DNA from: Botryllus schlosseri
Taxonomy: Eukaryota
Length of the DNA stretch: 64,000 bases
Assembly: GCA_051294905.1 (NCBI GenBank)
Contig: CM119382.1
Location: 8,556,001-8,620,000 of the forward strand
Direction of reading: 5' to 3'
Of this stretch, positions 5,955-48,800 are shown one piece after another. Both the position numbers and the translations under genes were made by a program. Within the stretch, counting starts at the first letter, position 1. Each line of letters starts with the position of its first letter. The notes below the pieces were generated by a model. That model searched no databases, was not told the DNA's origin, and was given only the letters and a program-made list of their open reading frames with translations.

Positions 5955-6000
<46 letters not shown>

Positions 6001-20787: not shown

Positions 20788-22261
20788 GTCTAGGGTATAC
20801 CGCATGGAAGACATCTATATCTTTACTCAGAAATTTGAAAAGATGATGCCAGAAGTTTTCCCCAAACCTGTTCCGAGTTGACAGATAGTAGGGAAGTCCG
20901 CGGTAATGCCTATAACGCGTGAAAATTTTATGATTGAATAGACAGTAGTCAATTTAACAGGAAATGGATATCACCGGGTTGCTTTGAGCCGCAATATTCA
21001 TAAATTGGTATGCCTAACACCGCACAAATTTTGAATTCCAATGTTCACTTTGACAGATCGTTTGCCTGTAAAAGGGAAATGATCATCGATTCTTTTCATT
21101 GGTTGAATCACTAAAAATTCAAAAATAACTTGATCGCCAAATAAGATTGATATGAGGTATATATAGCGAAGAGCTTCATGAGCTGAAAATTGACGCAAAA
21201 AATACCTTCATCATGGCTTAAAGTATTTATTTTTGATTTATTCGAAAATTTTCCGTGTATATTTCATGTCCCAGCCATTGTGCACATCAGGCACATACAG
21301 TTCGCTTCAGACCCAATATCTGCGCAGTCAATGGGGCCTGAAATGCCCTGGGTTGAATGTATGCAATATTTTATTGCTATATACGACATCTCAGTATATT
21401 CAGACAAGTGATATACTCTGTGATATCGTAGCATAGCCACTGCATAGTGCACAACTGCACATGCTTTATATATCACTCAAAGAATTGCTAGTTCGCCTTT
21501 TTCATCTACTAGTACTTTAACATGTTTGAGTTGTTTTCAAATTATTCGCTTTCGACATTGAGCCGTAGCAATGATTTGCGACATGTATACTTTTATAGGC
21601 TATTTTTAAACTCATGTCATTGAATCAATAATTCAACCATTGAGCTGTTGTCACTCGCTGTTAAGGTAGAGAGAGCATGTATGAATCAGCTTCAGGGAAT
21701 TCGGCAATAACATGGCGCTGGGCGTGCGGTGTAATAGCCTCTTGCACGGTGCTGATTATTACGAGCGACCTCTTCAGTTTACTTTTCTTCATTATCTACA
21801 ATATTCTGTTTCGATATCAGGTATTAGTGTGGCTATCAAATGTGATATTTTGCTGCTGTAGCTTCCCGTGAAGTTATCGGATGCATTGATTAGCCTAGAT
21901 GGTACAAAGTATGTGCATTGACTGCGTACACGTTTCATAGTGTAGTGGATTCAAGGATCGTCAGTTGGGATATTCGTATCATCATGATGGAGCATCGGCC
22001 TGCAGATAGGGGTATGTTTTTTTGTTTCATGCTTTTGTGATAGAAAAAATTATTTGGTTGTCTCTTCATTTGATGTTTCATTGTTGAACACTGTTCAGAC
22101 TTGGATAACTGGAAAATTTTCAGTTTTTTTTGAATTAGATTAGAATTGGAATTTTTTTTACAAATTAGACTAGAATAAGAATTATATTCGAACAGTTTTT
22201 TTTCAAATTAGATTAGAATTAGAAATATAGCTACACAGTTTTTTTCAAAATTACATTTTAA

Positions 22262-27032: not shown

Positions 27033-27535
27033 CAGGGTTGTAACTAAGTCACAAGGCTCCGCGTCACAAGTCAATCTCCCTTTTATAGTTTTGACTTGAG
27101 TCAGGTCGAGTCATTTTCAATTCACCATCGAGTCAAGTCCGAGTCCAAGTCAACGAGCAGTGGGTCGCGTCCAAGTCATGGTATAATGACTCGAGTCCGA
27201 GTCCAAGTCATTGTGATAACTGCTCAGTTTCCAGTTGAAAGTCAGGTTAAACCCACTTTTTATAACTCTTATTGGTGATATCGAATGGTTCGCATTTATA
27301 ATATACTAGGTAATTTCCCTCACTTTTACTAGTTTCCGGTCGCATTTTCAAGTACGGTACCAGTGTCAATAGATGAAATCCCAATATGGTGGTTACTTTA
27401 CTATTCTTCGAAAGTACAATGAAATGTTGGTCTTGGCCGTCTGAGTCTCGAGTCATATGACTTGGTTAGAGTCCTGCACAATGACTCGAGTCCAAGTCGA
27501 GTCAGAAAATCGTGACTCGAGTCATTACAGCCCTG
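27033..27535. mobile_element. hAT-type MITE rich in GACTCGAGTC repeats, 503 bp
   Basis: TIR cagggttgtaa / ttacagccctg, perfect TSD gtcttgac (27025-27032, 27536-27543). Related partial copies at ~97-296, ~11730-12047 and ~62291-62530. Confidence 0.92.
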
Positions 27536-27828
27536 GTCTTGACCTTCACGGAACCCCTGAGACTGGCTCATGGCACCCCTAGTATTCCGTGGAACACCGG
27601 TTAAGAGTCACTGGTCGAATTATACAGTTAGAATTAGGTAGTTAATCCAAGTCTGGTTGAGGAATTCAGTCTTGTGTAATAAAAGTATTGTGTGTCCGCT
27701 CTTCCGTATGACTAATACACGTTTTGAAGTCGAATCGACTGCTTGCTGAGATGAACAAAAATTGTTACCCAAGTACAGGTTTATATGGAAGAAATGTGCT
27801 TCACTGCATAGGTTAGGTGTATCTAACA

Positions 27829-28503
27829 CAGGGCTCACCAACACGTGGCCCCCGGATTCGTTTTTTGCGGCCCGCGATCTGATTTGAGATTCTGGTTTGA
27901 ATTCTTTCCGATTTGAATTCCGTCTCAAAATATAGTTTTATTTTCAAAATAGATATTCTCCTGTGTCCGACATCACTATTCCTCACTAGCTGAACCGGCT
28001 TCGGCGATGGAATCGGCATTCCATCGAATGAGAATCAGCTGATATGAATTGGTAATGGGCATATATTGCCTTGACGTGCAATGTCCCAGACACTGTCCGG
28101 ACCAAAACGCTTAGATAATGGCTTAGGGCTTCCACAGTGGATCAGGATTTACGAGAAAATATTCTTTCAGCTGTAGAACCGTGTCTCGCTATTCCTAATA
28201 TCGATGCCTTAGTTACTGAAAAGTGGTGTCACTTGTCAGATATCGTGCGCAGCTCGTAGTTCAAAATAACATGAAAGAAATAATCATGATGGTTTTGTTG
28301 TAATTGTATTTCTATATCAAATATTACTTTTTTGACTTTGACCGTCGCCCATGTTAGAGAGCACAGCGTTGTATTGACGTGAAGTTTTAAAAACGAGGTT
28401 GCTTAACTACGTGGCCTGTTTTGTCTCGATATTGCATTCTTGCGGCGTGCGGCCTTTGCGAAATTTGGAAAGTGACCCGCGACCCGTTTTGAGTTGGCGC
28501 CTG
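27829..28503 (+). mobile_element. Degenerate Charlie-type hAT derivative with transposase C-terminal remnant
   Basis: Left end cagggctcaccaacacgtggccc; remnant DLRENILSAVEPCLAIPNIDALVTEKWCHLS at ~28125-28220; eroded right end. Confidence 0.6.
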
Positions 28504-30792: not shown

Positions 30793-30858
30793 ATGGTCAA
30801 TGTACTGGTTTTCAGTTTATGCACGATGGTCAATGTACTGGTTTTCAGTTTATGCACG
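30793..30858. repeat. 33-bp tandem duplication
   Basis: atggtcaatgtactggttttcagtttatgcacg x2. Confidence 0.92.
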
Positions 30859-32451
30859 AACTCCTTCTGTTGTCACAAACTAGGTTGGCGGATTGGATAA
30901 AAGTCGACTCTAAGGCACATAAAGAAGGTAAAAAAAGGCCACTCCCGGCGACGCGAAATCTGCCGCCTCCATAAATTTGGCAGGCATGCAAGGGATAATT
31001 CTCTTCGTGCGAAATATCATCGAGATGACAGATTTCGCTTGCGACTAAAAAAAAGTTAGATCGGGGCCTACGATAACCCGTCTTAGGCCCTGGCAAGATA
31101 CCTCAAACGTGCGGATTGTGTAAATATGAACCCCACTAGGGCAGAGTCTTGTGACCTGAAATGCAGTGCGGGTCGGATATCGGCGACCGAATTCACGCAG
31201 GATATCGCTTTAACGTGACGCTGCAATTATTAGCCGTGCTACTATTCCCCATTGAAAATGGTCGTCTAATATCAACAACGACGGCAAAACGTGGCACCAA
31301 ATGGGGTCGGTAACTGCAAAATTGCGTCAATTTCGTCAAATTGGCGCGCGTTTTGCGTTCAGCAAATCGTTCGTCGGTAGCGCGCGGAATTGGCTCGTAT
31401 TGACGGCCGGTAATCAACCAGTTCGTAACGAGCCAAGGGAGAATTGATATGTTTTTTTTCATGTCGCCCGAGACGAGCACCGAGTATTTGCCAACTGGGA
31501 ACGCGAGATTCGAGAGGCCAAAGGTCGATAATAAGTCTCCGGATTCCTGCACATCGACGCGGAAACGGTGGCGTGGTGCACGCAGACTTGACAACTAGAA
31601 CGTTTTCAGATTTTTAAAATTAGATTAGAATTAGAATTGTAGTTACACGGCTTTTTCTAAATTAGATTAGAATTACAGAATTCGCGAGAACTTGGAAATT
31701 GAATGAAGTTCGTATCAAGTCAGAGTTCTCACCCATAAGCATCAGAATGATGAATGTCTGCGCAGCGAGTTTGGCTAGTTTCGTACGACACGGTTCTCCT
31801 GTAGCATTTTCAGGAAAACCAGAAGTCAATGAGAGCGTGGAAACATTTCACAAATTAGATTAAAATTGGAATTGGAGCAAAGAAACATTTGACAAATTAG
31901 ATTTGGATTATATATTACCGCCCCAATTAGTATGATTGGACAAATGGAACGATCTAGTTGCCCGTGTCCGTCTTCACTCAGCTGATGTTCGACAGATTTC
32001 GACGCACTTGTCTCTCTCTGCGATTTTAACGCATTTCTTGAGTGGCGTTGCGGTATTATCGCAGTTGCATACTTAACGCACAGAAGACACCATCAAATGT
32101 ATGCGTATGCGTATCTCCGATAGTAGATCTGATAATCACGCGATGGAATCGTTTCGACCGAATTTGATATGACGGATTCGATGGTGTGTTCCCTGTCGTG
32201 TTCCACTCAATATTTTTGTATGATATCTACTACTGATCAGGACTGGTCAGTGACGCGGTACTTCACTACTTTTTCGTACTTTAGTACTATAGTAGGTTTC
32301 CTCTACTTGTACTTCTTGCTGTTTTGAGACTATTTCCACTTCTACTTAATAACAATGTTCAGTTCCAGTCAGGCAAAACAGGCCCATAGCTGTGTCTACT
32401 TCTACTATAGTATTAATTAACGACCTTACATCTATTTCTGCCAGTAACAAG

Positions 32452-32690
32452 GTGGCGAGATAGCGTAGTGATATGATCCACATTCCACAGCTGCAACACC
32501 AATAGCTCGCGGATCCGAGTCCGACTGAGGTTCACTCCAAAATCTCGCCTCAGGTGTTGGAGGTTTCTCTAGGCTCCTCGCCTCACAAAAGCCTAGACGT
32601 GGGCCGTGCTACAAGTCGGCATCTGTGGAATCAAAATAAAGAATATCAGCCTTGTGTAAATGACCATTACAGTCGATAAAACATCGCAGA
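32452..32690 (+). mobile_element. Degenerate tRNA-derived SINE (second family)
   Basis: A-box-like tagcgtagtg (32461-32470), B-box-like ggatccgagtcc (32511-32522). Confidence 0.5.
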
Positions 32691-32917
32691 TACCGCAAGG
32701 CAAATACTAGAGTGCCAATTATGACTATTCTGACCGCATCTACTTTTGATATCGGGCCGACTGAGATCATGTGACTGGCGTCCGCGTACGTTGTTGACGA
32801 TCACGCAGAACCGCGGGGAATTGTTCTATAAAGATTGGCGGGCGATTTATCATCCACCAAAATAGACCGGGCGAAAGGGCGGTCTTTTATTGAGAACGCG
32901 GAGCGCGCGCTCGCCTG

Positions 32918-32927
32918 CTAAAAATAG
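32918..32927. promoter_or_regulatory. MEF2 consensus site CTAAAAATAG
   Basis: Exact YTAWWWWTAR inside a CpG-rich island. Confidence 0.55.
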
Positions 32928-33630
32928 CGACTCCCGCGGCGCGTATAATTGCAGCGAGGGCGTGATGGATTATACAATTGCGATTGATTTTACGCGGTAA
33001 TTCGTGGCGCGTTATCCGCTCCGCGGTGCTAACAAAAACGGGTTCTTATTGCCACGAAACGCAGACCAGGATATGAAACGAATTTACGGTGCTATTATCA
33101 CGGGGTCGCCACACAAAATCGGGAGAAGGCAAAAATTCCGACATGATCAAATTTTCGGCGCCGCGTACACGTCATGTGTACGATTGTGACGTCAAATTCA
33201 CGGGCAATACGATGTCAGAAGTTCGGAACTTGGGCATGGGGTGAGCTATTATGAGAGGAGTTTCAGTTTCCTGTATAAAATCAGGATATGTATTGGGTGT
33301 GCGCGTTCGCAACTTCGCTGTGTTCTGGCGGTATCGGGCCAGATCAATATCGCACAAGCATGTCTGTGCTATTTCAAATCAAAGGGGGTCACTGGTCAAA
33401 GTAGGTGTCGTATGTGCTGGAATAGTATTAGCGTCCCAATATATTCACATTGAAATGAAACTGAATATTTTCGGCTGACTGTCGTCAGGCGGTCAGTGGT
33501 AATTGTCAATAACTGTTCTTCACAAATTTCTCCTAGGTTATTGGTCAGCAACTAGAAGACAATTGTAAAGAACACTTGCTGAAAATTGCCCCTGACAGGA
33601 CAGGGCAGTTTTTTGCGGCATATACACCGA

Positions 33631-33900
33631 CTCGTGATATACATGCACAGTGCACACGAACTGTGCATATGCATACAATGAGTGCATACTGCTTATGCCG
33701 CTGGACAAGGAAGCTGCAGAAATAGCCTTGTAAGACTTTCTAAGTCTTGCACAAACCCTCCATGCTATCCGATAATGCCGAGGGCCAGGCCGGGAAGTCG
33801 TGGATGCCAGTGTTACTAATCAGGTCTTTGGTCTGACCCGGCTGAGGATTGAACCCACGACCTGCCGATCTAGAAGCGGGACTCTTCACCATCACGCTAT
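33631..33900 (-). mobile_element. tRNA-derived SINE
   Basis: Minus strand: A box tagcgtgatggt, B box ggttcaatcc, then ggtcagaccaaagac central domain and a simple-repeat-like tail. Confidence 0.8.
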
Positions 33901-34483
33901 CTTGTCTTGACTAGTTTGAGCCGAATATATTCAGGTTTATTGCAATATCAATATATTATTCAATTGTAGGTTGAAGTTCTGAACCCCTCCAAACGTCTCT
34001 TCAAATGTTAAGTAGAAGTAGAAAGTATGTACTGCAAAAGTAGCCAAAACCTACTTGAGTACTTCGAAATAGTAGAAGTACTTTGTTGCTGACGACTTCT
34101 GTTTGAAATAGAAACTCATAATTTCTGTTTTGCTCACGTAGACTTGCATTGGGAAGTTCGCGGATTACGTGATGGTAGCTGCTAGCTAGCGACTTTGTTG
34201 GCTGTTACCGGGCGACTTTCTACGTATATTGTGTTACCGACTGCTTCGTACGCAACACGTAACTGGCGCAAATTTCGCACTTAGATTTGCTGCAAAAGAA
34301 AACCGACTTTTACAGTGATCGGATGGAATCGCAATGCGTTTTTATTCAAATCCGCATATTACGCGGCACAAGAGTCGGCATCAAGTCTGCAATATCAAAG
34401 TCGACGAGGTTGTTGTACGGTGGATCGCGTGCAAAATGAAGCAGGGAGCCGATTGCAGACGGCGTGCCCTTTTCCTGCGCGTT

Positions 34484-34493
34484 CTATTTATAG
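34484..34493. promoter_or_regulatory. MEF2 consensus site CTATTTATAG
   Basis: Exact consensus inside a GC-rich island. Confidence 0.55.
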
Positions 34494-36911
34494 CGCGGCT
34501 TCGATGCTGTGTCATATCACATCCCGGCTAGGCGTGTGTATTCTCACACCCGCAGATGGTGTTTGCGGCCGACGCCGGCTGCCAGCACACGCACGGGAAA
34601 TCGCATGTTTTTCGGGCAGTAATTTATGGGGCTCTCCAAACATTCGAGTCTGAGTCGAATAGCGGGAATACTGAAATTATGTGTCCCTTTTCACCAAGAG
34701 TTACATTATCAGCTGGATTTGTAGTTTCTATACTTTTTCCCCAACGTGGAAGCCTTGAAACCTCGATTGATGATATCGCAGTATCCAATACATGTAGTGC
34801 AAAGTCATAATCAACCCACAGCTTTGTCACAAGTGCAATGAAATCTAGGCGTAGTCGAAAAATCACAGATTATAATTAGATTATAGATTATTAATGTGAT
34901 GGGGAACTGGCATTAATACCTTTGTGGCTGCATATTTCGACTTTAAATAGAATATTCGTATCGAAATCAACCCGTATATTTTCGGCTGACACTCGTCAGG
35001 GGTAATGGTCAGTAACTAGTAGAAAATTGGAAAGAACATTGTATATCAACAATCGTATCATCAATGACGCCACCAGCATGAAACCTCGAATAATCGGGGT
35101 GACGAGACGAGTGTCAGCCGAATATAGTCGTATTTATTTCAATTAAATATACTACTGTCCAAATCACAGTTAGACTAACGTTTAGAATTTGGGGTTCGTA
35201 AAATGTCGTTGGGTAGCTTCTACTCAGGGTTTTGCGTCAGGCCGACAGCGGAACAATGTCGAGTAAATAGCGCGGAAATCTCATGGGATAACTGGGCATG
35301 TGGACAACGTTGCGTTTCATAGCTGAATAACACGCTGACACCGCAGTATCCGGTCGCCGCGAAGTTGTGGTTGATTGCAGTCCCATGTCCTTCATAACAC
35401 AGTATTCGAAATTTTCGATACCGGCATTGGAAGTCCGTTGGAAATTCCACCAGCACTGAATCCTTGCCCGTTTTAACTTGCTGGATAGGGCATTTGACAT
35501 CTTATGCCACGGTATGTTTAGTTGTTTACTCTGGAAAAGCGAAACTGCAGGTGTCCAGAAATCGCATAGCCTAAACGTTTCAAATATCGACTCCGTTTGA
35601 TAGCGACTAGACAATGCAGATACTGTTTTCAGTTGTGTAGCTCTATCGAACGCATAGTGTGCATAAAACGGTTTCGATGAAGCCACAAAGGTTTTGACTT
35701 TTTGGCAAAAACAAGACGCGTTGTGTTGTGATGAGCGCCGCATTATCAAAACATATCTCACGTTACTCATATCTTGTTGATTGCGAGTTGTGTTTTGTGT
35801 GATTATGCAATTAATATTTTGGATGGCCGTTTCCGAGTCATTGTGTTGCTCCGTGCGATCAATCGAAGTGTTTTCCTACCGAGGTATTTTTAGTAGTCCG
35901 TGTTTGTAAGCCGAGTCTTTGAATAGGTTGGTTGACTGAAGTAAATAAGATCGGGATATTATTGTTCTCCACGGCTGGATGACAGGCAGCGTGTTTACAG
36001 TGCACTGCACATATAGCGCCCCAATCGTAGTGATCACAGGATTATAACAACAGTAGAATGGAGATATCGGTTTAGTTACGATCTTATTGCTTGAAAGATT
36101 GGCTGAAGCCATTTGTAGTAGATGAGGGGGCGAATTTTGTTTTGTAGATTCAGTATGCAGTAGGTAGAGTGTCGAATGTTCAACTTCGTGTCAACATTTC
36201 TGTCGATATTGTGTACAGTGGTTTTCAAAATCGCGAAAGAGGTAAATCTAGCGTATATAATTGCTTGCCCATGTCCGCTAATCCAGATAATGTGGGGTAT
36301 TCAGACAGTAGCACGGCCGTGAACGCTCTTCTTCTGATCAATTATAAATTCGGTCTGAACATGACGTCATGTTATCCGGGAGGTCTTGAACTCTTGAGGT
36401 ATTCATGTGCCTATGGGCCGATATCCAATTGGTAAGCTATTAGGATATTAACCCTACTATCAGAGCGATGGTTGTGATCTAGCAATAGACGCAATAACAT
36501 CACACAACAGAACACAGGTATCACGATTCACGCCAAACCACCACGCGTGTTTTCTAGCTGTTATACAACTATTTTGTAAATGCGCAATTAGAACTACAAC
36601 TACTGGCTTTGCAGAATCCACAAATAGAACTATTAAAGAACGGTGGCTGATAGTAATAGGTAGTGTGCACAAGGCTGATTTTATTGCAGCCACGATTTTT
36701 ATTCAGAGCGATTTAAGCGTAATCCCCGGATCCGCGGTTATAGCGAAAAATAAAAGCGAATTCGGCATGACAACATGAATTTCATAATTTAACATAAAAT
36801 ATTAGCGAGTAGCGATTGGTGTGCCCTCCGCGCGACCCGCTCAATGTAAACCCACCTGCCAGCGGCCGCGTCGGCACTCTCGCTGAAACATCTCCGTATC
36901 CCAAACGATCT

Positions 36912-36995
36912 CTATATTTAGCGCAGCGGCGATTGACGTCAGGGTCGTATTATTACTGCTTTCTCTCTCCTACTTACGGACTCGGTTTGACGTCA
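36912..36995. promoter_or_regulatory. MEF2 site plus two full CRE palindromes
   Basis: CTATATTTAG 36912-36921; TGACGTCA 36934-36941 and 36988-36995. Confidence 0.6.
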
Positions 36996-38410
36996 ATGCG
37001 GGAGAGAGTGAGAGAACGGAAGAAAGGCGGTCTGCGTCGTGGGCTAGCGCGCGCGAAAACACGAGCGATAAGCACAAAGCGTCGATTTTATCGAATAATA
37101 ACCTACCGTAATCTATTTGCCCGTTCAATTTAACCCGATATAGGGTCGATATTTGAGTAACACCGCGGTCCGTAGCCCATCGGGAATGGCATGGTTTAAC
37201 GCAAACAATAATGTTGCGTTGCGACAAAGCGTTTGAGATGGTATCTTCTCGTACGTGTCCATGGGGTATTTGTTTTCGACAAGGTATTTCTATTTTGATA
37301 TCTCGGCATGTTTGACTTCTGAGCTACTTTTCGGCGGAGGCATTTCTCTCGCTGAGCCGACGGTAGTATTGTGCAAAACGGAGCGTCTCTATTTTGGAGC
37401 CGCGCGCTGCTATATCTGGGATGTTATTTCATGCACAACAGAAAACGAATACTATTGAAAAGCATTGCTTCAGGCACGGCCTGGTGTGTGTAGAAAGGTA
37501 AAAAACAGAACAGTTAAACTATTATTTTTCTTAGATTCGTTGTGTTTAAGCAAAGTTGTGTAAGTTTAGATAAGGCGATCGGATTGCGTGTCACGCTCTT
37601 CGGCGAGTTGCGCGTGTATATCGATTATTGTTGCCAACGAAATGTACTGTTGAAGTTGCAGAACTCGATATACAATTGAACGCTATTTCATATTTAAATA
37701 ACCCCGGATATTTTCGGCTGACACGCGTCAGGTGTAATCGGCAGCAACTATCAGAGAATTAGAAAGAACATTGTACATCAACAATCGTATCGTAAAGGTT
37801 CATAAATTTTTGCCGAGTGTTCTTTAGTAAAATAAGTGGTGGTACAGGGCACAGGAGATACGCGTTTTGATTATAAATGTATCTGCGCTACATCGATATT
37901 GGAGATGCACTGAACTGATCAGGGAACCGTGTCTAACTGGCCACGCCGTCCGTCCGGACGTAACTGAATTAGTTCGGCGGTATTTTATGCAAATCGTGAC
38001 ATTGGGATAAGCAAGTTCTGGATCGCTTTACTGTGAAGGAAAAGGCGATTACGGATGTCACTACTATCTTTACGGTGTGCCGTGCATAGTTGATTAGTGA
38101 CGAAGTGCTTCCAGGCTACATTTTCGAAGTACCCAAAGTAGTTGTAAATACTTGTACTACTTAGTGGTTATGATTTTTAGCGACTCTTACGTAACAGTTT
38201 ACGGTTGTCCCTTTTCATGCAAAACTAGGCCTACGTTAGAACTAGTGTAGAAGTTTCGACGTTACTTGTAGTTCTAATCTGGTACCAAGGGCGACTACTT
38301 TGAGGCTTTGACCACCACCACTTGTACCTTGCCAGCGCAAACACACTTGATCCTATACCGCTAATGTTTAATGTTGGCGAAACTACTGACTGCAAATTTG
38401 AGTGTGGGAT

Positions 38411-38747
38411 CACGTGCTATTTATAACCGCGGCGATGAGATATGTTGTATGATAGCAGTCCGCTGGCAGGATGCACTTCGATCGGTTCCGTAAAAACGTC
38501 TCCGCGGAATCTATTCCCGGACGGCGCGCGAATGGTTGATTAGCGGCGCGTGCAGCCCGGATGCGCGGATTTCGTGGAATCCGAGACTTTCGCCGCGCTC
38601 TGCCCAAATTTCTTAACCGAAGAAGCGCGCTGCAAGGCTTCGGCCGGCCAACGGGACATTGATCCGGCGTAGCGCATAATCGTGATTGTGCTCGTGAGTC
38701 ACGGAATCTTCTGAAGAATACACAACACGGCGCTGTGCTATTTATAG
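38411..38747. promoter_or_regulatory. E-box plus two MEF2 sites around a CpG island
   Basis: CACGTG 38411-38416 abutting CTATTTATAA 38417-38426; CTATTTATAG 38738-38747. Confidence 0.55.
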
Positions 38748-39549
38748 AATTGCGCTGAGCTGTTACAATAGAGATCTAAGCAGATATTGTGGTAGCCGTA
38801 CGGGCGATCGGCTGACGCTCTCGCACTTTCCTTTCTGTCGATTCAGTTCTTGCAAAACCAGGTAGCTGTCCTGTGAGGCAAGTTGACTTTGTTCTCTGGT
38901 GAGAAAGTTCGTGCGTCTTGAGGAATGAGCAAGGAGCAAATCAGTACATCTCACGTTGTAGGCTATACGATTCCCGGTGGCCAAGTAAACTTAATCTGCG
39001 GGTAATAATTATTGAATAATAGATTCATATTGAAACATACCGGAATATTTTCGGCTGACACTCATCAGGGGTAATCGTCAGCAACTTGCAGAGAATTGGA
39101 AAGAGCATTGTATATATCAACCGTATCATCAAAAATGTTCGGGTTTATTTCAATATGAATATCTATTTAACTGTATATTGAAGTTCAGCACCTCCGTGAA
39201 TATCTGCATAATAATATTTTGCGCGGATGCCGATGCTGATTTAGATTAGATTGGAATGAGGTAGGCTGAAAATAGATCTATTCATGCTCTGAGCTAGCGT
39301 CTTAGTGGTTTACCGTAAGAGAAAACCATTTGACACCGGCTTGTCGTATGGTCGCGATTACTCTGAAACAGGCCCTCGAAGTAATCAACAGTTGGAGTTG
39401 AATACAGTTTTGTAATATCTGTAGTCACTACTGTATCATCGACGGCGAATATATTACTAATTATCAGCAACATGCTTTTAGATTGTGCTTTGAAAATTCG
39501 ATCGTTAAGTTCGGCGTGAGGGTATAAATTTATAAGAAACTCTTGGATG

Positions 39550-40025
39550 TACAGAACTTCACCATACAATTGAATAATTTATATTGACAATGAAACAAAC
39601 CCTATTATATTTTCGGCTGACACTCGTCAGGGTTAATCATCAGCTACTAGTAGAGAATTCAAAAGAACTAAGCAGTCGTGTTACCAATTATGACGTCACA
39701 TACGTAAAAATTCTAATAAACGAAGCTAACAGATGGTCCGATATACTACTTTTGGATTATACACGAACTCCTTCTGTTAGCACGAACTAGGTCGGCGGAT
39801 TTTGATTAAAGTCGACTCCAACTCAATATTAGTGAAAGAATGAATGTCGTCTCGGAGAATTTTTCGCCATCTGTTCGCCGCGATTATTCTAATTTTTGAT
39901 GTCCGTGTCACTGTCTGTTGATATACAAAGTTATTCTTAAATCTCTGCTAGTCGCAGACGATTACCCATGAAGAGTGCCAGCCGACAATATTCGGGTTTA
40001 TTTCAATATCAACGTATCATTCAAT
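39550..40025. mobile_element. Most complete copy of an abundant foldback family (core ttttcggctgacactcgtcagg...actagtagagaattg)
   Basis: Inverted arms at both ends. Further full or partial copies near 12270-12500, 23380-23770, 30590-30915, 33445-33570, 33915-34000, 34950-35150, 37640-37795, 39010-39200, 44540-44600, 58690-58820 and 61425-61500. Confidence 0.8.
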
Positions 40026-40678
40026 GCTTTCGAGGAGTTGCCAAAGTTCGTATCTGTTGAAGTTATATAACCTACTATTTAATAGTATATTCATATTGCA
40101 ATGAACCCGAATATAGTATAGAAGTTTATGTATATACAACGCCAGACAACAATAGTCGCATTCAGCTAGTACAGTTTCAGTATTGCGTGGTTGCTTATTT
40201 TGTTCGCGCTTCGGATAGTTTGCATAATTTCGTATTAATTCATTGTACAATGTACAATTGTCGGCGTGGAATATTCATGTCGCTGTTGATGTATTTAAGA
40301 TTGCTAGGCCTAATTTAATTAACGTGTACTTATTTTGTTTTCATTTTCGCTGGTATTAATAATGCTTTGTGACATTTCTGCGTCATGCAATCGAATTGTA
40401 AAGTTTTTTCATGAGTGGTTCTCGCTATTCATAGAATTACTTTGTTTTCGTATCGCGGCAGTGGCGTAATGCCTTATTGCGGTCCGCTTTTATTGCGAAT
40501 GTGTCGAATTATTTAGATCTGTATCGCCTTTGGCTAGTGTAAAGGTCGTATCTGTCTCTCGTAACAGAAAATAGCGAATCGCCACCATCGACAACGAAGG
40601 CGCCGTCGGGTATTGCGAACGGGATTACGGAAGCGATTCCAGGTTGGTGGCAATTTCAATACCGATTGTTACGCTTTA

Positions 40679-40905
40679 TGACGTCATACTCGGATGAAGA
40701 TACGCGGCAGGCGGCAATCATATCGTCGCGCGTATCGTTTTACGAAGCAATTTCGTAGTGTCTATGAGTCATTGCCGTGGGATATGATGAAAACGTTTCA
40801 TGCTTTGGCCTATTTTGGCGTTCGAATGGATGTGTAGAGTGCTTTTCGATAACATTGTGCGGACGCACCTTCGCTATCACACGCACTCTGGGTGTCTATT
40901 TATAA
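40679..40905. promoter_or_regulatory. CRE plus MEF2 site
   Basis: TGACGTCA 40679-40686; CTATTTATAA 40896-40905. Confidence 0.45.
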
Positions 40906-42725
40906 CGTGCTCCACTCGACTTATGGATTATTCATTGGTGTTCTTGAAATAGTCGATCGATTTTAAAAGCGCGCTGATTTTTATTGTTATCTAGGCGCAT
41001 TCTGGCTCCTGTTTATTGGTATATGAATGTACCTTCTAACCTTCACACCATTACTTTATCTATCTTTTCGGCGTTTTCGCGAACAATATGATGATATCTG
41101 ACCACGGTTACAGTAGCTGAGCTATTTGCAGTGTCCTTCCCGTTCTCTAACCCAGAGGTATTATGACCACGACTTAACTTGATAGATATAGTTAGCCTAC
41201 ATTGAGATTGTGTCACAGAGGCTGGCCTAATGGTGGACCTTAAACCGTGCGCTATCGCCCTCGAAATTTTGTTTCTCATGGCCAGATTTTAGGTGATAGC
41301 TGTTGCTTGCTTGTGACTTCATATATGCGTACTCTATATGTGCTACACTGCTTTAAATTGAAAATAGGACACTAATTTTTGGACGAACTAATGTCCTGTT
41401 TAGAGATTACTGCGCTACTTGTAGCTGGCTTCAAAATGCATAGGCTACTTTATGTTACGAAAGTTTTCTCTATTTAAAATCGGGGCTGAAAACGGCCTAT
41501 CTAAACATAACATATTGACAATGAACCCTGTGTGCAGCGAAATATTGGCGTGTAAATGTAGAGTGGAAGACGTTCAGTGGTAATTTCTCGATTGATTGCC
41601 TGGTTATAGAGACACGCCTTCAAAAACAGCAGAGGCCTCATGGTATTAAGTCCTTGCTAATGTAAACTATGACCAATTATCTAAATTGCCAGGATGTTAT
41701 ATACTTGTCTCGCTTCCAATTGTGTTGTAAGATTGAGCACTCTATCTGTTGTACCTTCAGACATGACTCTGGTTATTTTGGTTCAACGACACAATTGCAT
41801 TAGATCACAATGTAGCTAAATTCCGATAGAATTCTCTACATAGAAATAAAGGACTATTGCGAAAAAAAGCCCTTGGTGCCAAGGGCCCATGGACGGTAAT
41901 TGTCACATTCAATTTGTTGCAAGTTTACAAAGCTTCAATTCAGCCCCAATGTTGAGTGTGTAGTTTGTTGGTAGTGTGTGTTTTAAAATTGGCTTTTGAA
42001 AATTATTTCCTGTGCGTACACTACATATGGAGTACTAGCTCACAGCTTTCCAAATTACATGTGTTGCTGGATTGTGCTATGACTTGCACTCTGCACATGA
42101 CTGCTGCAAAGCTGGCTTACATCCTTCAGGTTGCAAGCTTAGGTTGCGTGTATCTCATTGTTATTTCCCTTCTATAGTTATAGCACGGCATGGATCTTCC
42201 ATGTAATATATGGCATTGCTATAATAGCGTTTATGATTTCCTGCTTTCCATCTTGTGCTATTAATAAATCATTGAGACCGCTGCTCAATGAAGACTTGCA
42301 CATAACAGACACGCAGACATGAATCATATTATATAAATGGAAAGTGTGCATTGTATTTTGGGCAGATGCAAGGATGCACTCATGTTATGCAGTTTAGTGG
42401 TTACTGAAGCTGAATTTTACGTGTGACATTAACTGAAGAACTTTGCGACAATGAAATGTGATTTTATGCGTCTCTTGAATTGGGATGTAGTCATTTTAGC
42501 ATAAAAGGCTAGAACTCAACATTTAAGAAGTGTTATACAGGAATGATAATGGCACAACTGCATATTTGTGATTGCTAGCTGTATATGCTCAATTTGAGAA
42601 TGTGGGTGACAGTGACACCATGCGACTTGCTTGCGAATGTAGACTTCTAACATTATTTTGTTACTGGCAACCTGCCTGTGCGATTACTCGTTATCAAATT
42701 GCTTACATCATGTCATTCTTTGCAG

Positions 42726-42859
42726 AACGAATCCCTGGATTAACTCTCGCTGGTTTCAGCACTGCAATGGCTGCTGGCCTTGCCGGGGCTCACGCAATGG
42801 GACTAACGAACGAAGATTACCAGAAGATCATCAAAATGAGACAGCAACACATTGACGAT
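42726..42859 (+). CDS. HDAC4: HDAC exon 1 of model (candidate ATG 42767; [15 protein letters not shown] helix)
   Basis: tttgcag acceptor, gat|gtgagt donor, phase 0 into 46939; weak similarity to the Gln-rich helix. Confidence 0.7.
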
Positions 42860-45800
42860 GTGAGTGTAAGTTTGTGATTTGATTAAAATTGAGTTTTTCA
42901 TCTATTTCCTTCCCTGTGTATGAATTATACCGCTATGTTTTATTCTGTTCTTTATGGTGAGGGCAGTTGTAAAATAAATCTTGCAGATAACAGTACTCGT
43001 ATCATTCGGAAATGGTGATATAGTCTTGACTGCCTCATAGCTGAATATCAGGCTGATAACTGATCAAGATCAGATCAATCTCTGCCGGTATCTTACCAAT
43101 ATCTTCCCTCGATTTGATGGGGATTTGGACGTCAAAATTTGCGATAAATTACTAGCAATAATAAACACACTGATAGTGGGCATAAAGGAGAAAGAAAATA
43201 CGCTGTGAAGTGATCTATTTTATAAGGAAACTGATTTTGTAACCTTGTCGCTGCCAACTTATTATCAAAACAGTTGTTCTCATATTGTCAGAGGGTATTT
43301 TGACAGTAACATTCCGCTGTTTCTGCTAATGGAAATTCCTGAAACCAACCCACTGCCCTCCCACGTTGGTGCGGTTCAAATCTAGTCCTGCATTTTCCGT
43401 GAGCTGTCTTCACTTTGGTAATCTCAGATATGGTTTTACCTCAAACAGCCAAGGTAGTCTCTGATTCTGCTCACGTGGCTTGAATTTTAATTGTAATAGG
43501 CTGTAAAACAAAATTACCGAGTAATTAAGTAAAGCAAGCAGAGAAGGCCTACTCAAGTACTTAGAAGATGTTGCTAAGCTTAGTTACTGATTATCCTGGC
43601 TTGCGGACATCATCATCTATCTCTTTGCCACTGTACAGATTGGCTTTAATGAAAATGTGAAATTGACCTTGTTGTGTTAATGGGAACAGAATCAGCATTA
43701 TGGCTAGCATTATTGAGCCATTAGTACCGTAATATTAATGATTAGTACTGGGTGAATCCATTACAATGGTGGACTATCCTAGTCTTTGAAGTATGAATCC
43801 CTTTAGTACCTCACTTGTCATTAAAATAATTTTATTGTCAGGAATTTTTTATTCAAATTCGGATGTATTCCACTCAGCGGCATACCACTCGATGTAGCTA
43901 GTCACTCAATTATATTAATACCTGTGGTTTTTCTCAGCCTGTAATTTTAAGTGTCTCTCCCATTTGTCATGACTCACTGACGTTTCTTGTATCTCTATCT
44001 GTGTAATCAAAATATGAGTGGTGCAGCTGCCCTGCTTAGTGGGTATCACAAATGGCCACTTTAAACTCGTGCTGTTTTCCCACTATTCCAAATACCTTGC
44101 CTGGCTATTTATTGTCTTTTGAGGATTGGTTCACACAAGGCCGACAACTTTTTGCGCCTTAACGGGCTGGTGTAATTCTGTTGAATCTATGATATAATTT
44201 GGTTCTAAATTAGCCAAAATACAAATTCGTCCCATGGTCTCATTAAAGTTTTGACGTTTGCATGATGCATTAACCTTAAATACCTTAACTGTCAATAATC
44301 AAGTGTATGTTGAGTGACCAATAACCTACCCTACAGTCGGAAGAGATCGTCGATTGAAAATTTCTTACATGAGCCTATATTATTAATTCATTATTATAAT
44401 TATATTATGATTCACATTAAGGGATTTACACTTTACAGGCATCTCTACTCCAATTGTCCACTATCAGTATCTTTTAGAGTCCTATGCTCTCAGTATTGCA
44501 ATGATTTTAAGAACAGATTAACCTATAATTCGAAAGCATAATCATATTCATCTTTTCAATTGTATATTGAAGTTCTGTACCTCAAGGAAGCTCTACAGAT
44601 TAATCTGTGGTTATAACATCACTAGAATATTTCTGCAGTATTACATTCCACTCTGGAACTGGCGATGACATTTGATTTGATTGATGGCCACCTTTGTGAT
44701 GCGATAATCAAGTTTATTTATGTATCAAACAATATTTTTGTAATAAACTTGGTATCTTTTTCGACATCTGATCCATACTAATAACAAACACTGGGCTGCT
44801 TAATCTTTGCGTTTTTCAATCGTGCCCAACGCTTGGTAATTGGATCTTTCGCAATTTCGGAATGGAAAGCGCGCACTGTCGTTATCTTGAGGTCGATCAT
44901 GACCTGAACTGAAAGTCACCATATCATCTCAGCTAAAAATAGATTATAGGTTCCTAGAAATGCATCATAGAGAACACTCTGTGCTAGATGGGCGAGTCTT
45001 GACGATTTGATCAAGGATTAATTTGCAAAGGTACCAAAAAAATAGGGGAATTGTGGCTTGAATAAATCATGAGCTACAAGTCGTAGAACCGTCCGTGCAT
45101 GGTCGCTGGGGATAACCGCTAATTATGTGTAAGTTGTGATGAAATTAGTATCATCATTAGTATCACGATAGTGAATATGTGAAACCTTTTGGGTTAATTT
45201 CTGAAAGGCCCTGTTTCAGATTACCAAATCACGTTGACATTGTTTGAATTTGCGTAAGGAATACCTAAATTTGTTGTCTGCACAGATGGGTTATTACCAG
45301 AATCAGAATGTGTTTGATATTGTGGAATCGCTGGATACATAGTAATTATTGCAAACTATGTAGTAATTGTCCTGCTACTGCAGTCATGCTTGTGGGCTGT
45401 GATTTGTGAAGTTATTTGTGATTACTCTTTTAGTTTCTGGCTCGACAGCAACTGCAGCATCATTTCCAAGTGAGTAAACCATCCGTTTCTTTATATTACT
45501 TGCTTAATTGCTTCGAATGTTAAGTGCATCCGTCCTTTTATCTATAATATCACAAAATACTTGACATTTTATGAGTGGTTTGCTTATACTGATACTGATA
45601 GGTAATCCTAAGGTACATTTGTAACCGCAGCGCTGGCCTGGCATTTGAAGTGGATTCCCGGAAAGCCGGGGTATTAATATAGCAATTTGGGTTGTGAATT
45701 AACAACAGAGGGTGAATGTTCTTCCATATTTAGAATATCATGTCATTAAAACAAGGATGATGGTACCATGTCTTCTGTACTTTATGTAGATGATCAAATG

Positions 45801-48800
45801 ACTATTTGCTCGGAAACATTTACGACTATTCATAGCAATCTATTTATAGTAATAAGACTGATGTGTACATGTATGATGTGGGGATCTGGTCATGTTATTT
45901 ATACGATTCATGTAGCCCTGAAACCTATTCCGAGCAAGCATTTCCTTTACTGTGATCGAGGGCCTTTGATTTCACTGTTTTTATTTACAAAGCGACCTCG
46001 CAATTAGAGGTCGCGTTTGTTTTTATGACTGAAAGGTATTTTGGAACTTTCGATTTTAATCTCTGACACTATCGATTATTTCGAGCATGAGTCACAGGGA
46101 AATTGGATGTCTTAATATAGCTCCATAGGGTGCCAGGACAATATTATGATTTCAATAAATCCTATTGATTTTTTTTTGGGGCGTATTGAGGCGTGTCCGG
46201 TTTTTGATGATAAAACGTGTTCAAAAATGACCTTTTTTTTCTCAAATTGTACTGGCTACTTGATAAAATTGTTAGGTTACCTAATTAAAGGCTGCACACC
46301 AAATTCAGTTCCAACCAGTAGCCTCATTGCTACGAAAGAAAGTTATTTATTTATTATATAAAAATAAATGAATTTTTGTTTCAAAATTCTACATTTACCC
46401 CATGAAATAGTTAGGTTGTCTATAGAAAAGATTCTCACCGAATTTGGCTCAATTCCAACCAGTGAAAGCGGAGTTATTGTAGTTGACTTTGGATTTGAAT
46501 AAAATAGTAGGCCTACTTGCGGTGGCAAATTCTTCAATTATTTTTTATAGTTTTGCCCATCGTAAATACTATGATTTGAAATCTCAAATTTTGAACATCA
46601 ATAACTTTGTTTCTTCTGGTTGGAATTGAGCGAAATTTGTTGTGCATCGTTTTTTCACACAATCCACCAATTTTATGAGGCAAGCCAGCAAAATTAAAAA
46701 AAAAATCATATTTATTTTCATTAAATAAATCCAAAACTTTTTCTCTTATGGCAATGCCACAGTATGTCGGAATTGAGCCAAATTTAGTGTGCAGCTTTTT
46801 TGTAGGTACCGGTAACCTAATTTTATCAAGTAGCCAGTACAATTTGAAAGCAAAAGTCTTTTTTGAACAGCCCTAGTGTTTAGTGACCGCATTATTGAGT
46901 AGTAATTTGGTGCAAATGTGATTTTGTTTGCTCTTTAGCAATTGCTCCAAAGCCAGCAGCAGGAGCACAACGCTGCCAAAAGCCAACTACGGCAACAGTT
47001 GGAGGAACAACACCATAATGATCTAATGAATCAAGTATTGAACAAAGACAAAAGCCTTGAGAGTAAGCCGGGCCCGGTTATAGCTTTTGAAATCAATGCG
47101 ACGGTGTGGGTACATTTTAGGTGCGAACGCGTCCACCGCCGTGAAGCAGCACCTGGCGAATTTTGTAATCGGTAGGCGGAGTGTTAAAAAGTACGACGGT
47201 TATCCAAACAGTGCAAGGTAAACGGATATGTTGGTTTGGCGATCGCTCAATGTCAGGGGGTGTGTCTGTTTGATGTGTGCCGTGAAGTTGGTGAATGTAT
47301 TTTGTATTTTTCCTGTCTGTGCTCTGCTAATGATTGCTTAGTTTTCTCAAAGTCAGAGGCTGTAGCTAGTAAAATACCCAATAAATGTGACATCACTCTG
47401 ACACTATTGCATTGCGGCTTGCAGTCATAGAAGTGATGAGACGCAGTGCCAGGAATAGTATAAAAAAACTTGGTGGTGAAAAGTTAAGCGATCGAACGTG
47501 AGATCGTCGTGAATTGAAATCCGAGAGAAGTTGAATGTTTAAATTTGAAAACACGGTGAGGTGGGTCAAAATCATCATGTTCAGCCTGTACAGGTTATGT
47601 CAAATTGTCCATGCATTGTTTATATTACTATTTTCTATGGATTTGAGTGGTTGTCAAGGAGTTCGGCACTTAGAGATTATGGCATTAGAAATGCAATGAC
47701 TATTATTGTCATGGAATTAATGTATCGATATTGTATTAATAAATATGAAAATGAATGTTTCACTGAATGTGAGTGTGAACTGTGATATATACCCAACTTG
47801 GCGAATTTGGTGATAGGCGTTAGCAGGGTTGCCAGATTGGCCCTTTTTAGAGGCAGTTGGTCCCCCCAAATTTTGTTAGGCCCCTTGGCTCTCTGTTTTC
47901 AATATTTGGCTCTATTTGAAAGCAGTTGGCATATAGTATCAAACTAGCTATCTTTTGATGAAAAATCCAAAAAATTAAGCATATAAGTTCGATAAGTTTC
48001 AAATTTTAAATTAAAATTCAGAAAATTTAATCATTAGAATTTTCACAACTCTCATATTATAACAAAGTTTTACATAACGAATTTATATACAATTGGAAAA
48101 GTCTTGAAATATTAGCAGTTGTCGACCGTGTCCCACAATACTATCAACAGTTGTGGTAGATTTGGTGTCCCAACAGTATCAACAATATAAATCTGGCATT
48201 CCCAGTGATTGACAAAAGGTGTATAGGTAATATTGCGACGTTATCGACGTTTTTAACATTATTAACAACGTTATTGAACAATTTAGGAATTTTTAGACAC
48301 TGTTTGGTCCTTTTTCTCGAAAGCTGTCTGCCAACCCGGGGCGTTAGGGGTAGGGTTAGGATTCGGGGCCGCCAAATGTCGAATTCACTCGTATTTGAGT
48401 ATCTGGATTCAACTTCTCATCTCTTGATTCGGAATGGCTTGCGTTTTGTTTCAGCGGTCGGAGTTTAAGGTGGACCCCGTCTCTGGACAACAGAAACGGA
48501 CACCACGATCTCGCCGCGCCCTATCCCCACGTGTTCGACAAGAAGAACAGTTTCCCTCTCCGAAAAACCGGTATTATTTTGCGAATTTCTTCCGTCTTCG
48601 CGGCATTTTTTATCGTCTTTTTCCGGTAGCGTCGGAGCCTAATCTGAAAGTGCGGTCGAAACTTCGTCACAAAGTCGCGAACAATGACAGACGCTGCTCG
48701 CCGTTACTTCCGAGGCACGGCGGCGTCACAGGTAGCCGTGCCGAAGTGAATGATCACATAAAGAGAAAACTCAATAATGACCAAGGTAACTTAACGATAT

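What the first reader, a model, noticed from the sequence alone, without database searches (positions are those of the whole stretch)
32900..44950. Cluster of MEF2 sites upstream of a MEF2 co-repressor: candidate negative-feedback loop
Seen: CTAAAAATAG 32918, CTATTTATAG 34484, CTATATTTAG 36912, CTATTTATAA 38417, CTATTTATAG 38738, CTATTTATAA 40896 and intronic CTAAAAATAG 44933. Most sit inside GC/CpG-rich islands rather than AT-rich background. Rough hand estimate assuming ~62% AT: about 0.4 CTAWWWWTAG expected in 8 kb versus 4 seen; this was not an exhaustive count. Established: vertebrate HDAC9 is a direct MEF2 target forming a feedback loop. Inference: that circuit may predate the vertebrate class IIa duplication and here act through a catalytically dead repressor.
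Basis: partly seen in the sequence, partly recalled or inferred. Interest (0 to 1): 0.72.

Follow-up and report, generated by a model that had tools for sequence, protein, structure and literature searches.

The report
Conserved MEF2–CRE promoter inside HDAC4 gene
A sea squirt's gene for a protein that silences the muscle/nerve regulator MEF2 carries a non-random cluster of MEF2 docking sites. One of them sits in a small control element kept almost unchanged in four distantly related sea squirts, so the self-limiting loop known from vertebrates probably exists here too.

Summary
All seven motifs are at the stated coordinates. CTAWWWWTAG occurs 4 times in the 8 kb before exon 2, against 0.2-0.3 expected. 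Six upstream sites lie in GC/CpG-rich patches, unlike other A/T-rich look-alikes in the window.

The gene is a single-copy ascidian class IIa HDAC (HDAC4-like) that encodes the MEF2-binding helix. The sites are not simply upstream. I located exon 1 at 21984-22011, so sites 32918-38738 lie in the 18.5-kb intron 1.

The site at 36912 begins a ~110-bp module: MEF2 site, CRE (TGACGTCA), GTATTATT block, second CRE. It is the only alignable non-coding DNA between the window and Styela clava. The same order and orientation recur in Ciona and Clavelina. In S. clava it ends ~105 bp before an annotated alternative first coding exon, so it is probably an internal promoter.

S. clava independently has five CTAWAAATAG sites in the equivalent 8 kb, against 0.12 expected. 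The other window sites show no alignable flanks.

MEF2 binding, MEF2 dependence and homology with the vertebrate HDAC9 sites are untested. A TATA-box reading is not excluded.

Verdict: a new, testable member of a known kind of circuit.

The parts
21984..22011 (+). Putative coding exon 1 (MMEHRPADR plus 1 nt, GTATGT donor, phase 1) of the class IIa HDAC gene. It makes 22012-40567 intron 1.
   Evidence: Local alignment to the N-terminus of the Styela sp. transcript product P0151. Sequence read. The phase fits exon 2 and gives ...ADRENSESPP, compared with S. clava ...LNQRDSDSPP.
21600..21609 (.). CTATTTTTAA (fits YTAW4TAR) about 375 bp before the exon 1 ATG. Possible MEF2 site of the distal promoter.
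   Evidence: S. clava has CTATATTTAG 288 bp before its exon 1 ATG, and both are followed by AATCAATAAT. MAFFT did not align the two regions, so this is only suggestive.
32918..32927 (.). CTAAAAATAG, the top-affinity MEF2 10-mer, in the most CpG-dense patch (flank GC 0.70, 11 CpGs).
   Evidence: Affinity from PMC7470950. No alignable flank in S. clava.
33187..33194 (.). Palindromic CRE, TGACGTCA.
   Evidence: CREs in the 8 kb before exon 2: 5 against 0.13-0.45 expected.
34484..34493 (.). CTATTTATAG (CTATAAATAG on the minus strand), MEF2 consensus in a CpG-rich patch.
36911..37025 (+). Conserved module: MEF2 site 36912-36921 (CTATATTTAG), CRE1 36934-36941, GTATTATT block 36947-36954, CRE2 36988-36995 within TCGGTTTGACGTCAATGCGGGAG. 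Probably the proximal promoter of an internal first exon.
   Evidence: Best non-coding HSP between the window and S. clava (E 2.5e-6). Alignments A1-A3 with S. clava, Ciona and Clavelina. The strict architecture is found exactly once, on the + strand, in each of the four loci. The S. clava isoform X3 ATG lies ~105 bp after CRE2.
36362..36369 (.). Additional palindromic CRE.
38411..38426 (.). CACGTG E-box abutting CTATTTATAA (TTATAAATAG on the minus strand; fits YTAW4TAR).
38738..38747 (.). CTATTTATAG, MEF2 consensus.
40568..40642 (+). Coding exon 2 (..NSESPPSTTKAPSGIANGITEAIPG).
   Evidence: Local alignment to S. clava exon 2 DSDSPPPTTKNSNG. AG acceptor and GT donor read.
40679..40686 (.). Palindromic CRE just inside intron 2.
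40896..40905 (.). CTATTTATAA (fits YTAW4TAR) in intron 2.
42767..42859 (+). Coding exon 3 ([31 protein letters not shown]).
   Evidence: tblastn with S. clava P0268.
44933..44942 (.). CTAAAAATAG in intron 3, in an AT-rich context (flank GC 0.36, no CpG). No supporting evidence.
47120..47218 (+). Exon encoding the MEF2-binding amphipathic helix ([19 protein letters not shown]).
   Evidence: Translation. It keeps the equivalents of HDAC4 A167, S168, V171, K172, L175, F178 and V179, which contact MEF2A (PMC10954479).

Best explanation
The window holds the single class IIa HDAC (HDAC4-like) gene of a stolidobranch-type ascidian. Its 18.5-kb first intron is a regulatory landscape with MEF2-type and CRE sites in CpG-rich patches.

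At its centre (36911-37025) is an ancient cis-regulatory module: a MEF2 site, a CRE 7-12 bp away, a GTATTATT block, and a second CRE 54-65 bp further on. It always points toward the gene body. In Styela clava it ends about 105 bp before an annotated alternative first coding exon. I therefore read it as the proximal promoter of an internal transcript.

Inferred mechanism: MEF2 and a CREB/ATF-type bZIP factor bind the module and switch on the gene. MEF2 probably also binds the four or five flanking sites. The product keeps the MEF2-binding helix and the 14-3-3 phospho-site, so it would bind MEF2 again and shut down MEF2 targets, its own promoter included. That would give signal-gated negative feedback.

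Shown here: the motifs, their excess, the replication in S. clava, the four-species conservation, and the MEF2-binding helix.

Inferred: promoter status in the window species, which factors bind, and the feedback itself.
For: - Motif excess over Markov orders 0-6 and dinucleotide shuffles.
- GC-rich context is specific to the cluster (Fisher P = 1.2e-4).
- Independent replication at a region fixed beforehand by homology: the S. clava 8 kb before exon 2 holds 5 CTAWAAATAG against 0.12 expected (P about 2e-7). These are all five in its 60.7-kb locus.
- The layout is the same in both species: two sites, the module, two sites, exon 2.
- The module is the only significant non-coding alignment in a 25 kb by 33 kb comparison, and it starts exactly at the MEF2 site.
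- It recurs in Ciona intestinalis and Clavelina lepadiformis.
- The strict architecture occurs once, on the gene's strand, in each of the four loci. None of 300 simulated windows had even a MEF2+CRE pair.
- In the module CTA and TAG are kept in all four species, while the W4 core differs (TATT, TTTA, TTTA, TAAA) and is flipped in Clavelina. This fits MEF2, which makes base contacts only at the YTA/TAR half-sites (PMC7470950).
- 12 of 13 sites have G/T before and A/C after the core.
- The sites show no strand preference relative to the gene.
- The S. clava isoform X3 first exon starts ~105 bp after CRE2.
- The MEF2-binding helix is conserved.
- Precedents: HDAC9 driven by MEF2, Hdac7 driven by JUN. 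CREs are functional in Ciona muscle promoters, and Mef2 is expressed in tail muscle.
Against: - There are no binding, accessibility, TSS or expression data for any of the four species.
- The core also reads as a TATA box (TATAAATA) in three species, 7-12 bp from a CRE, as in classical CRE-TATA promoters.
- The five non-module sites in the window have no alignable flanks in S. clava. Ciona and Clavelina have no extra cluster.
- The first exon after the module could not be identified in the window.
- The G/T...A/C flank preference for MEF2 is recalled from motif libraries, not checked here.
- Only four species were compared.
- A trout hdac5 locus has no such module.
Confidence: 0.6

Rival explanations
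1. The A/T element of the module, and perhaps of the other patches, is a TATA box bound by TBP. The module would then be a CRE-CRE-TATA promoter, possibly firing on the minus strand as an antisense or divergent transcript. MEF2 would play no part.
For: CTATAAATAG contains TATAAATA. In S. clava and Ciona it reads TATAAATAG on the minus strand directly after the two CREs, with 8-11 bp between CRE1 and the A/T element. All four TATAAATA matches in 32.9-41 kb are the 'MEF2' sites.
Against: - The flanking C and G, which matter for MEF2 but not for TBP, are kept in all four species and in 11 of 13 cluster sites.
- The asymmetric core is flipped in Clavelina, and in the window it is a poorer TATA (CTATATTTAG).
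- CTAAAAATAG sites (4 of 13) are weak TATA boxes.
- Orientation relative to the gene is mixed (7 of 11 point away).
- No minus-strand gene is called in the introns of S. clava, Ciona or upstream of Clavelina.
- The annotated S. clava exon lies on the plus strand, downstream of both CREs.
Confidence: 0.2
2. The conserved module is a real promoter or enhancer, but the A/T element is read by another A/T-binding factor (forkhead TRTTTRY, Cdx/Hox TTTAT, or another MADS protein). The loop with MEF2 would be illusory.
For: CTATTTATAG contains TATTTAT (a forkhead-like core) and ATTTATA (Cdx-like). This rests on general knowledge of those consensus sequences, not on a test here.
Against: - CTAAAAATAG and CTATATTTAG do not fit forkhead or Cdx cores, yet they belong to the same clusters and, for the second, to the same orthologous position.
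- All 13 sites fit YTAW4TAR, and 10 of 13 fit the narrower CTAWAAATAG.
- CC(W)6GG (SRF) is not matched.
Confidence: 0.1
3. Apart from the conserved module, the other sites (32918, 34484, 38417, 38738, 40896, 44933) are chance matches in a region that the reader picked because it contained them.
For: No flank conservation with S. clava. Ciona and Clavelina lack extra sites. A decoy class (GAA-W4-TTC) is as frequent over the whole window. Sites 44933, 45840 and 23655 sit in ordinary AT-rich DNA.
Against: Local excess of 15-20 fold under every background model. The GC-rich context is specific to the cluster. An equally strong and positionally equivalent cluster exists in S. clava, in a region fixed beforehand.
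Confidence: 0.1

Closest known systems
Vertebrate HDAC9 promoter MEF2 sites and the MEF2-HDAC9 negative-feedback loop (Haberland et al. 2007, cited in PMC7912504; Di Giorgio et al. 2020, PMC6954409; Velasco-Aviles et al. 2022, PMC8853665)
   Same: A class IIa HDAC gene whose product binds and represses MEF2 carries consensus MEF2 sites at a promoter. Two sites are reported in the human HDAC9 promoter; one sits in the ascidian module, with more nearby.
   Different: - Here the gene is the single pre-duplication-type class IIa gene of a tunicate.
- The site is tied to two palindromic CREs, lies at an internal promoter in intron 1, and sits in CpG-rich DNA. The HDAC9 promoter is described as lacking TATA and CpG-rich elements.
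- Binding and function are untested.
- Sequence homology with the vertebrate sites was not examined.
JUN-driven Hdac7 and MEF2D-driven Hdac9 compensation among mammalian class IIa HDACs (PMC8853665)
   Same: bZIP (AP-1/CRE-type) and MEF2 inputs control class IIa HDAC gene transcription.
   Different: In mammals the two inputs act on different paralogues. In ascidians both site types sit side by side in one module of the single gene. Whether this reflects an ancestral dual-input promoter that later split between paralogues is speculation.
CRE-containing promoters of Ciona muscle terminal genes (reviewed in PMC6589888)
   Same: Palindromic or near-palindromic CREs close to the start of transcription. 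Mef2 is expressed in the same tail-muscle cells.
   Different: Those promoters are described with Mrf and Tbx6 sites, not MEF2 sites. No MEF2 target has been described in tunicates. The tissue in which the HDAC4 module acts is unknown.
Classical CRE-TATA promoters (somatostatin type; from general knowledge)
   Same: A full CRE lies about 10 bp from an A/T-rich box.
   Different: The A/T box keeps the MEF2-specific outer C and G, flips in one species, and lies on the far side of the CREs from the annotated downstream exon.

Membership tests
MEF2 binding site (YTAW4TAR) | 10-bp match to YTAW4TAR, with CTA/TAG half-sites for high affinity | tested here: met
   Sites 32918, 34484, 36912 and 38738 match CTAW4TAG. 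Sites 38417 and 40896 match YTAW4TAR. Three match CTAWAAATAG; CTAAAAATAG is the top-affinity 10-mer (PMC7470950).
MEF2 binding site (YTAW4TAR) | More frequent than a composition-matched background | tested here: met
   4 against 0.18-0.24 in 8 kb (window) and 5 against 0.28-0.37 (S. clava) for CTAW4TAG. 5 against 0.12 for CTAWAAATAG in S. clava. Ranks first of 64 decoy classes in the window's 8 kb.
MEF2 binding site (YTAW4TAR) | Evolutionary conservation of the site | tested here: inconclusive
   Met for 36912: kept in four species of three ascidian orders. Not met for the other five, which have flank scores at null level. The cluster as a whole recurs in S. clava only.
MEF2 binding site (YTAW4TAR) | Occupied by MEF2 in vivo or in vitro | not testable with these tools
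   Needs EMSA or ChIP with ascidian Mef2.
MEF2 to class IIa HDAC negative-feedback loop | The gene product is a class IIa HDAC with the MEF2-binding amphipathic helix | tested here: met
   tblastn to S. clava HDAC4-like across about 19 exons. Helix [17 protein letters not shown] keeps the V, L, F, V contacts and A, S, K. The 14-3-3 site motif ASEPNLK is also present.
MEF2 to class IIa HDAC negative-feedback loop | MEF2 site lies in a promoter or enhancer of that gene | tested here: inconclusive
   In S. clava the module ends ~105 bp before the ATG of the annotated alternative first exon. Order and orientation toward the gene are the same in 4 of 4 species. No TSS data exist, and the corresponding exon was not found in the window.
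MEF2 to class IIa HDAC negative-feedback loop | Transcription of the HDAC gene depends on MEF2 | not testable with these tools
   Needs Mef2 loss or gain of function with HDAC4 read-out.
MEF2 to class IIa HDAC negative-feedback loop | Site homologous with the vertebrate HDAC9 promoter sites (common origin) | not tested
   No vertebrate HDAC9 locus was fetched. One trout hdac5 locus shows no MEF2-CRE-CRE module, which says little.
cAMP response element (CRE) | Full palindrome TGACGTCA, conserved | tested here: met
   CRE1 is TGACGTCA in 4 of 4 species. CRE2 is TGACGTCA in three and TGACGTAA in Ciona. In the window's 8 kb there are 5 against 0.13-0.45 expected.
TATA box | TATAWAWR at about -30 from a TSS, in a fixed orientation | tested here: inconclusive
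   The sequence matches in three species. It is imperfect in the window and the orientation is flipped in Clavelina. Distance to a TSS is unknown.

The most novel reading that the evidence does not exclude
The MEF2-CRE-CRE module would be the ancestral dual-input (MEF2 plus CREB/ATF/Jun-type) autoregulatory promoter of the single class IIa HDAC gene. It would be older than the split of the three ascidian orders and perhaps shared with the vertebrate ancestor. After the vertebrate duplications its inputs would have been divided among paralogues (MEF2 to HDAC9, Jun to HDAC7). It would also be the first direct MEF2 target defined in tunicates, and one of very few non-coding elements alignable across ascidian orders.
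Probability: 0.3. Interest if true: 0.7.

Novelty: new member of a known kind. Interest (0 to 1): 0.52.

Why it matters
MEF2 and class IIa HDACs form a central signal-dependent switch in muscle, heart, neurons and immune cells. The feedback from MEF2 onto HDAC9 is known only in vertebrates.

A conserved MEF2 site, coupled to two CREs, in the single class IIa HDAC gene of four ascidians suggests the loop is much older. It may also have been wired to cAMP/calcium signalling from early on.

The finding names a ~110-bp element that can be tested directly by reporter electroporation in Ciona. No MEF2 target has been described there (PMC6589888).

Non-coding DNA of different ascidian orders is generally not alignable, so an element that survives is a strong candidate for an essential control.

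The ascidian protein also lacks a zinc ligand and has Phe at the activity switch. A working loop here would add to the evidence that repression of MEF2 does not need deacetylase activity.

Tried and rejected
- **Repeats.** The sites are not part of the MITE family that has at least seven copies in 30.6-40.1 kb.
- **RNA genes.** No Rfam match and no tRNA in 30-46 kb, so the patches are not small-RNA gene promoters of a known family.
- **Whole-window enrichment as proof.** Weakened by a decoy class of equal frequency. I relied instead on the local and cross-species tests.
- **Orthology of the other five sites.** Flank alignments to every S. clava site score at null level.
- **Exon 1 at 24699.** Rejected because it has no donor. 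The exon is at 21984-22011.
- **Coding first exon after the module in the window.** None found with the right phase. It may be non-coding.
- **P1 promoter alignment between window and S. clava.** MAFFT did not align the sites. A shared AATCAATAAT next to both is only suggestive.
- **PDB search with the 33-aa helix exon.** No hit because the query is too short. I compared by eye with the residues listed in PMC10954479.
- **Identifying the window's species.** An exact look-up of a 696-aa ORF found nothing on record.
- **Isoform X3 transcript of S. clava, to place the TSS.** Not on record.
- **JGI metagenome scan for the module.** 0 hits.
- **Tara/JGI contigs with an intronless class IIa HDAC-like ORF (L006-L008).** No module; organism unknown.
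- **Trout hdac5 locus.** No module.
- **Haberland 2007 (PMC1800816).** Not held, so it is cited through later papers.

Full report
**1. The observation**

- The window has 11 CTAWWWWTAG. Dinucleotide shuffles give 1.5 (none of 100 reach 11), and Markov models of order 0-6 give 1.4-2.5.
- A decoy test tempers this. Among the 24 classes XYZ-W4-rc(XYZ) with the same base make-up, GAA-W4-TTC is as frequent (12). The whole-window count is therefore not specific by itself.
- The local signal is stronger. In the 8 kb before exon 2 there are 4 CTAWWWWTAG against 0.18-0.24 expected, 3 CTAWAAATAG against 0.05-0.10, and 4 YTAWAAATAR against 0.4-0.6. There CTA-W4-TAG ranks first of all 64 classes.
- The six sites from 32918 to 40896 have flanks of 46-70% GC with 3-11 CpGs. 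Only 1 of the 21 YTAW4TAR matches outside the 32.9-41 kb stretch reaches 46% (Fisher P = 1.2e-4).
- They coincide with five CpG-dense patches at about 32.8-33.2, 34.2-34.6, 36.8-37.2, 38.4-38.8 and 40.4-40.9 kb.
- They lie outside the MITE copies that fill the spaces between the patches.
- No Rfam family and no tRNA is found in 30-46 kb.
- Palindromic CREs (TGACGTCA) are also concentrated here: 5 in the same 8 kb against 0.13-0.45 expected.
- The site at 44933 sits in ordinary AT-rich intron sequence and has no further support.

**2. The gene and where the sites lie**

The exons downstream encode a class IIa HDAC. A search of protein representatives with the exon at 55687-55953 gives Styela clava 'histone deacetylase 4-like' as best hit (80% identity). 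Ciona, Clavelina and Phallusia proteins follow. An earlier scan note calls this genome a sea squirt. The window is a relative of Styela but not S. clava itself.

tblastn with the S. clava protein maps about 19 exons from 42767 to 62861. I added two exons:

- Exon 2 at 40568-40642 (NSESPPSTTKAPSG, compared with DSDSPPPTTKNSNG).
- Exon 1 at 21984-22011 (MMEHRPADR, GTATGT donor, correct phase).

Intron 1 is thus 18.5 kb, against 17.5 kb in S. clava. It holds the sites 32918-38738. Site 40896 is in intron 2 and 44933 in intron 3. Part of the fifth 'island' is exon 2 itself.

The product keeps two regulatory features. The first is the MEF2-binding helix ([17 protein letters not shown], exon 47120-47218). 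It has the equivalents of HDAC4 V171, L175, F178 and V179, and of A167, S168 and K172, which contact MEF2A. The second is the 14-3-3 site motif ASEPNLK.

Like the S. clava, Ciona and Clavelina proteins, it has GFSA (Ser for a zinc-ligand Asp) and LEGGF. This agrees with earlier scan notes on this window.

**3. Comparison with other ascidians**

I fetched the S. clava locus (L001), the Ciona intestinalis locus (L002) and the Clavelina lepadiformis locus (L004).

Between the window and S. clava, a sensitive blastn of all non-coding DNA from the upstream neighbour gene to exon 3 (25 kb by 33 kb) gives one convincing hit: window 36911-37025 against L001 22498-22623 (E 2.5e-6). It begins exactly at the MEF2 site.

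The alignments show, in all four species and always in this order and orientation toward the gene body:

| Element | Detail |
|---|---|
| MEF2 site | CTATATTTAG (window), CTATTTATAG (S. clava), CTATTTATAG (Ciona), CTATAAATAG (Clavelina) |
| Spacer | 7-12 bp |
| CRE1 | TTGACGTCA |
| Spacer | 5 bp |
| Block | GTATTATT (TTGTTATT in Ciona) |
| CRE2 | 54-65 bp after CRE1, within TCGnnTGACGT(C)AAT(G/A)CGGAG |

- A strict pattern for this architecture matches exactly once, on the gene's strand, in each locus. None of 300 simulated 64-kb windows contained even a MEF2+CRE pair.
- In Ciona the module's site is the only CTAW4TAG in 37.5 kb, and its flanks are 64% GC.
- In S. clava the ATG of the alternative first coding exon of isoform X3 (MPYCAG, then a GT donor) lies about 105 bp after CRE2. 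This is why I read the module as a proximal promoter.
- No other protein-coding gene is called in these introns or upstream of the Clavelina gene.

**4. The rest of the cluster**

S. clava provides an independent test, because the region (8 kb before exon 2) and the motif were fixed beforehand. It has 5 CTAWAAATAG against 0.12 expected (P about 2e-7). These are all five in the 60.7-kb locus.

Two sites lie before the module and two between the module and exon 2, as in the window. Their flanks, however, do not align with those of the window's sites. Ciona and Clavelina have only the module site. The extra sites are therefore supported by recurrent enrichment in two species, not by site-by-site conservation.

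A further possible MEF2-type site lies before exon 1 in both styelids: window 21600 and L001 9713, each followed by AATCAATAAT. The regions did not align as a whole.

**5. MEF2 or something else?**

For MEF2:

- MEF2 dimers make base-specific contacts only with the outer YTA and TAR and read the W4 core by shape. CTAAAAATAG is the best 10-mer (PMC7470950).
- The module shows just this pattern. CTA and TAG are kept in all four species, while the core varies and is inverted in Clavelina.
- All 13 sites (six in the window, five in S. clava, one each in Ciona and Clavelina) fit YTAW4TAR. Ten fit CTAWAAATAG.
- 12 of 13 have G/T before and A/C after the core. This matches my recollection of MEF2 matrices, which I did not verify here.
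- The sites have no preferred strand relative to the gene.

Against certainty:

- CTATAAATAG is also a good TATA box, and it lies 7-12 bp from a CRE, as in classical CRE-TATA promoters.
- Forkhead or Cdx cores fit some of the sites, but not all.
- No binding, accessibility or TSS data were available.

I put MEF2 at about 0.6, a TATA role at about 0.2, and another A/T-binding factor at about 0.1. Chance is excluded for the module but remains possible for individual flanking sites.

**6. Mechanism proposed**

Signals that phosphorylate the HDAC at its 14-3-3 sites release MEF2. MEF2 and a CREB/ATF-type factor then act on the internal promoter and probably on the flanking patches, and raise HDAC4 transcription. 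The new protein returns to MEF2, including MEF2 at its own promoter, and ends the response.

Only the sequence features are shown here. The loop itself is an inference from the vertebrate precedent:

- MEF2 drives HDAC9 through two promoter sites (PMC7912504, PMC6954409).
- JUN drives Hdac7, and MEF2D drives Hdac9 (PMC8853665).

In tunicates Mef2 is expressed in tail muscle, but its targets are unknown. CREs are functional in muscle promoters (PMC6589888).

**7. Comparison, novelty and verdict**

The circuit is of a known kind. New here are three things: its presence in the single class IIa HDAC gene of tunicates, its coupling to two CREs at an internal promoter, and conservation across Stolidobranchia, Phlebobranchia and Aplousobranchia.

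Homology with the vertebrate HDAC9 sites was not tested. A trout hdac5 locus lacks the module, which says little. A JGI metagenome scan found no further copies.

The scan had noted the catalytic-site changes of this protein before, but not this regulatory element.

Noticed in passing
window 30587-40114: A MITE-like family with terminal inverted repeats around ATATTTTCGGCTGACACTCGTCAGGG has at least seven full or partial copies in 10 kb of intron 1. They lie between the CpG-rich patches and never inside them. One copy contains an exact 33-bp tandem duplication (30793-30858), and two copies carry a TGACGTCA (30745, 39691).
   Followed up: partly
window 614-631: Two TGACGTCA overlapping a CACGTG form an 18-bp palindrome, TGACGTCACGTGACGTCA, near the start of the window. 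It may be a promoter element of a neighbouring gene.
   Followed up: no
window 15855-17207 (-) and L001 1137-2501 (-): The intronless 450-aa ORF upstream of the HDAC gene is conserved and syntenic in S. clava (454 aa, 67-73% nucleotide identity, same orientation). No Pfam family is recorded for it.
   Followed up: partly
window, whole: GAAWWWWTTC occurs 12 times in the window, as often as CTAWWWWTAG and far above most classes of equal composition. I have no explanation for it.
   Followed up: no
window 36947-36954; L001 22533-22540; L002 13579-13586; L004 7106-7113: A GTATTATT block (TTGTTATT in Ciona) 5 bp after CRE1 is conserved in all four species. I could not assign a binding factor to it.
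   Followed up: partly
L006 6716-9574, L007 7325-10183, L008 51-2909: Tara Oceans and JGI marine contigs carry an intronless 952-aa class IIa HDAC-like ORF (37% identity over 83% of the S. clava protein) in 29-30% GC DNA, with more than 6 kb of gene-free sequence upstream. The organism is unknown.
   Followed up: partly
window 12701-14791 (+): A 696-aa single-exon ORF with a hydrophobic C-terminus. An exact look-up did not find it on record. Function not examined.
   Followed up: no
window 5898-6236: A (CA)n microsatellite that reads as a THTHTH... ORF.
   Followed up: no
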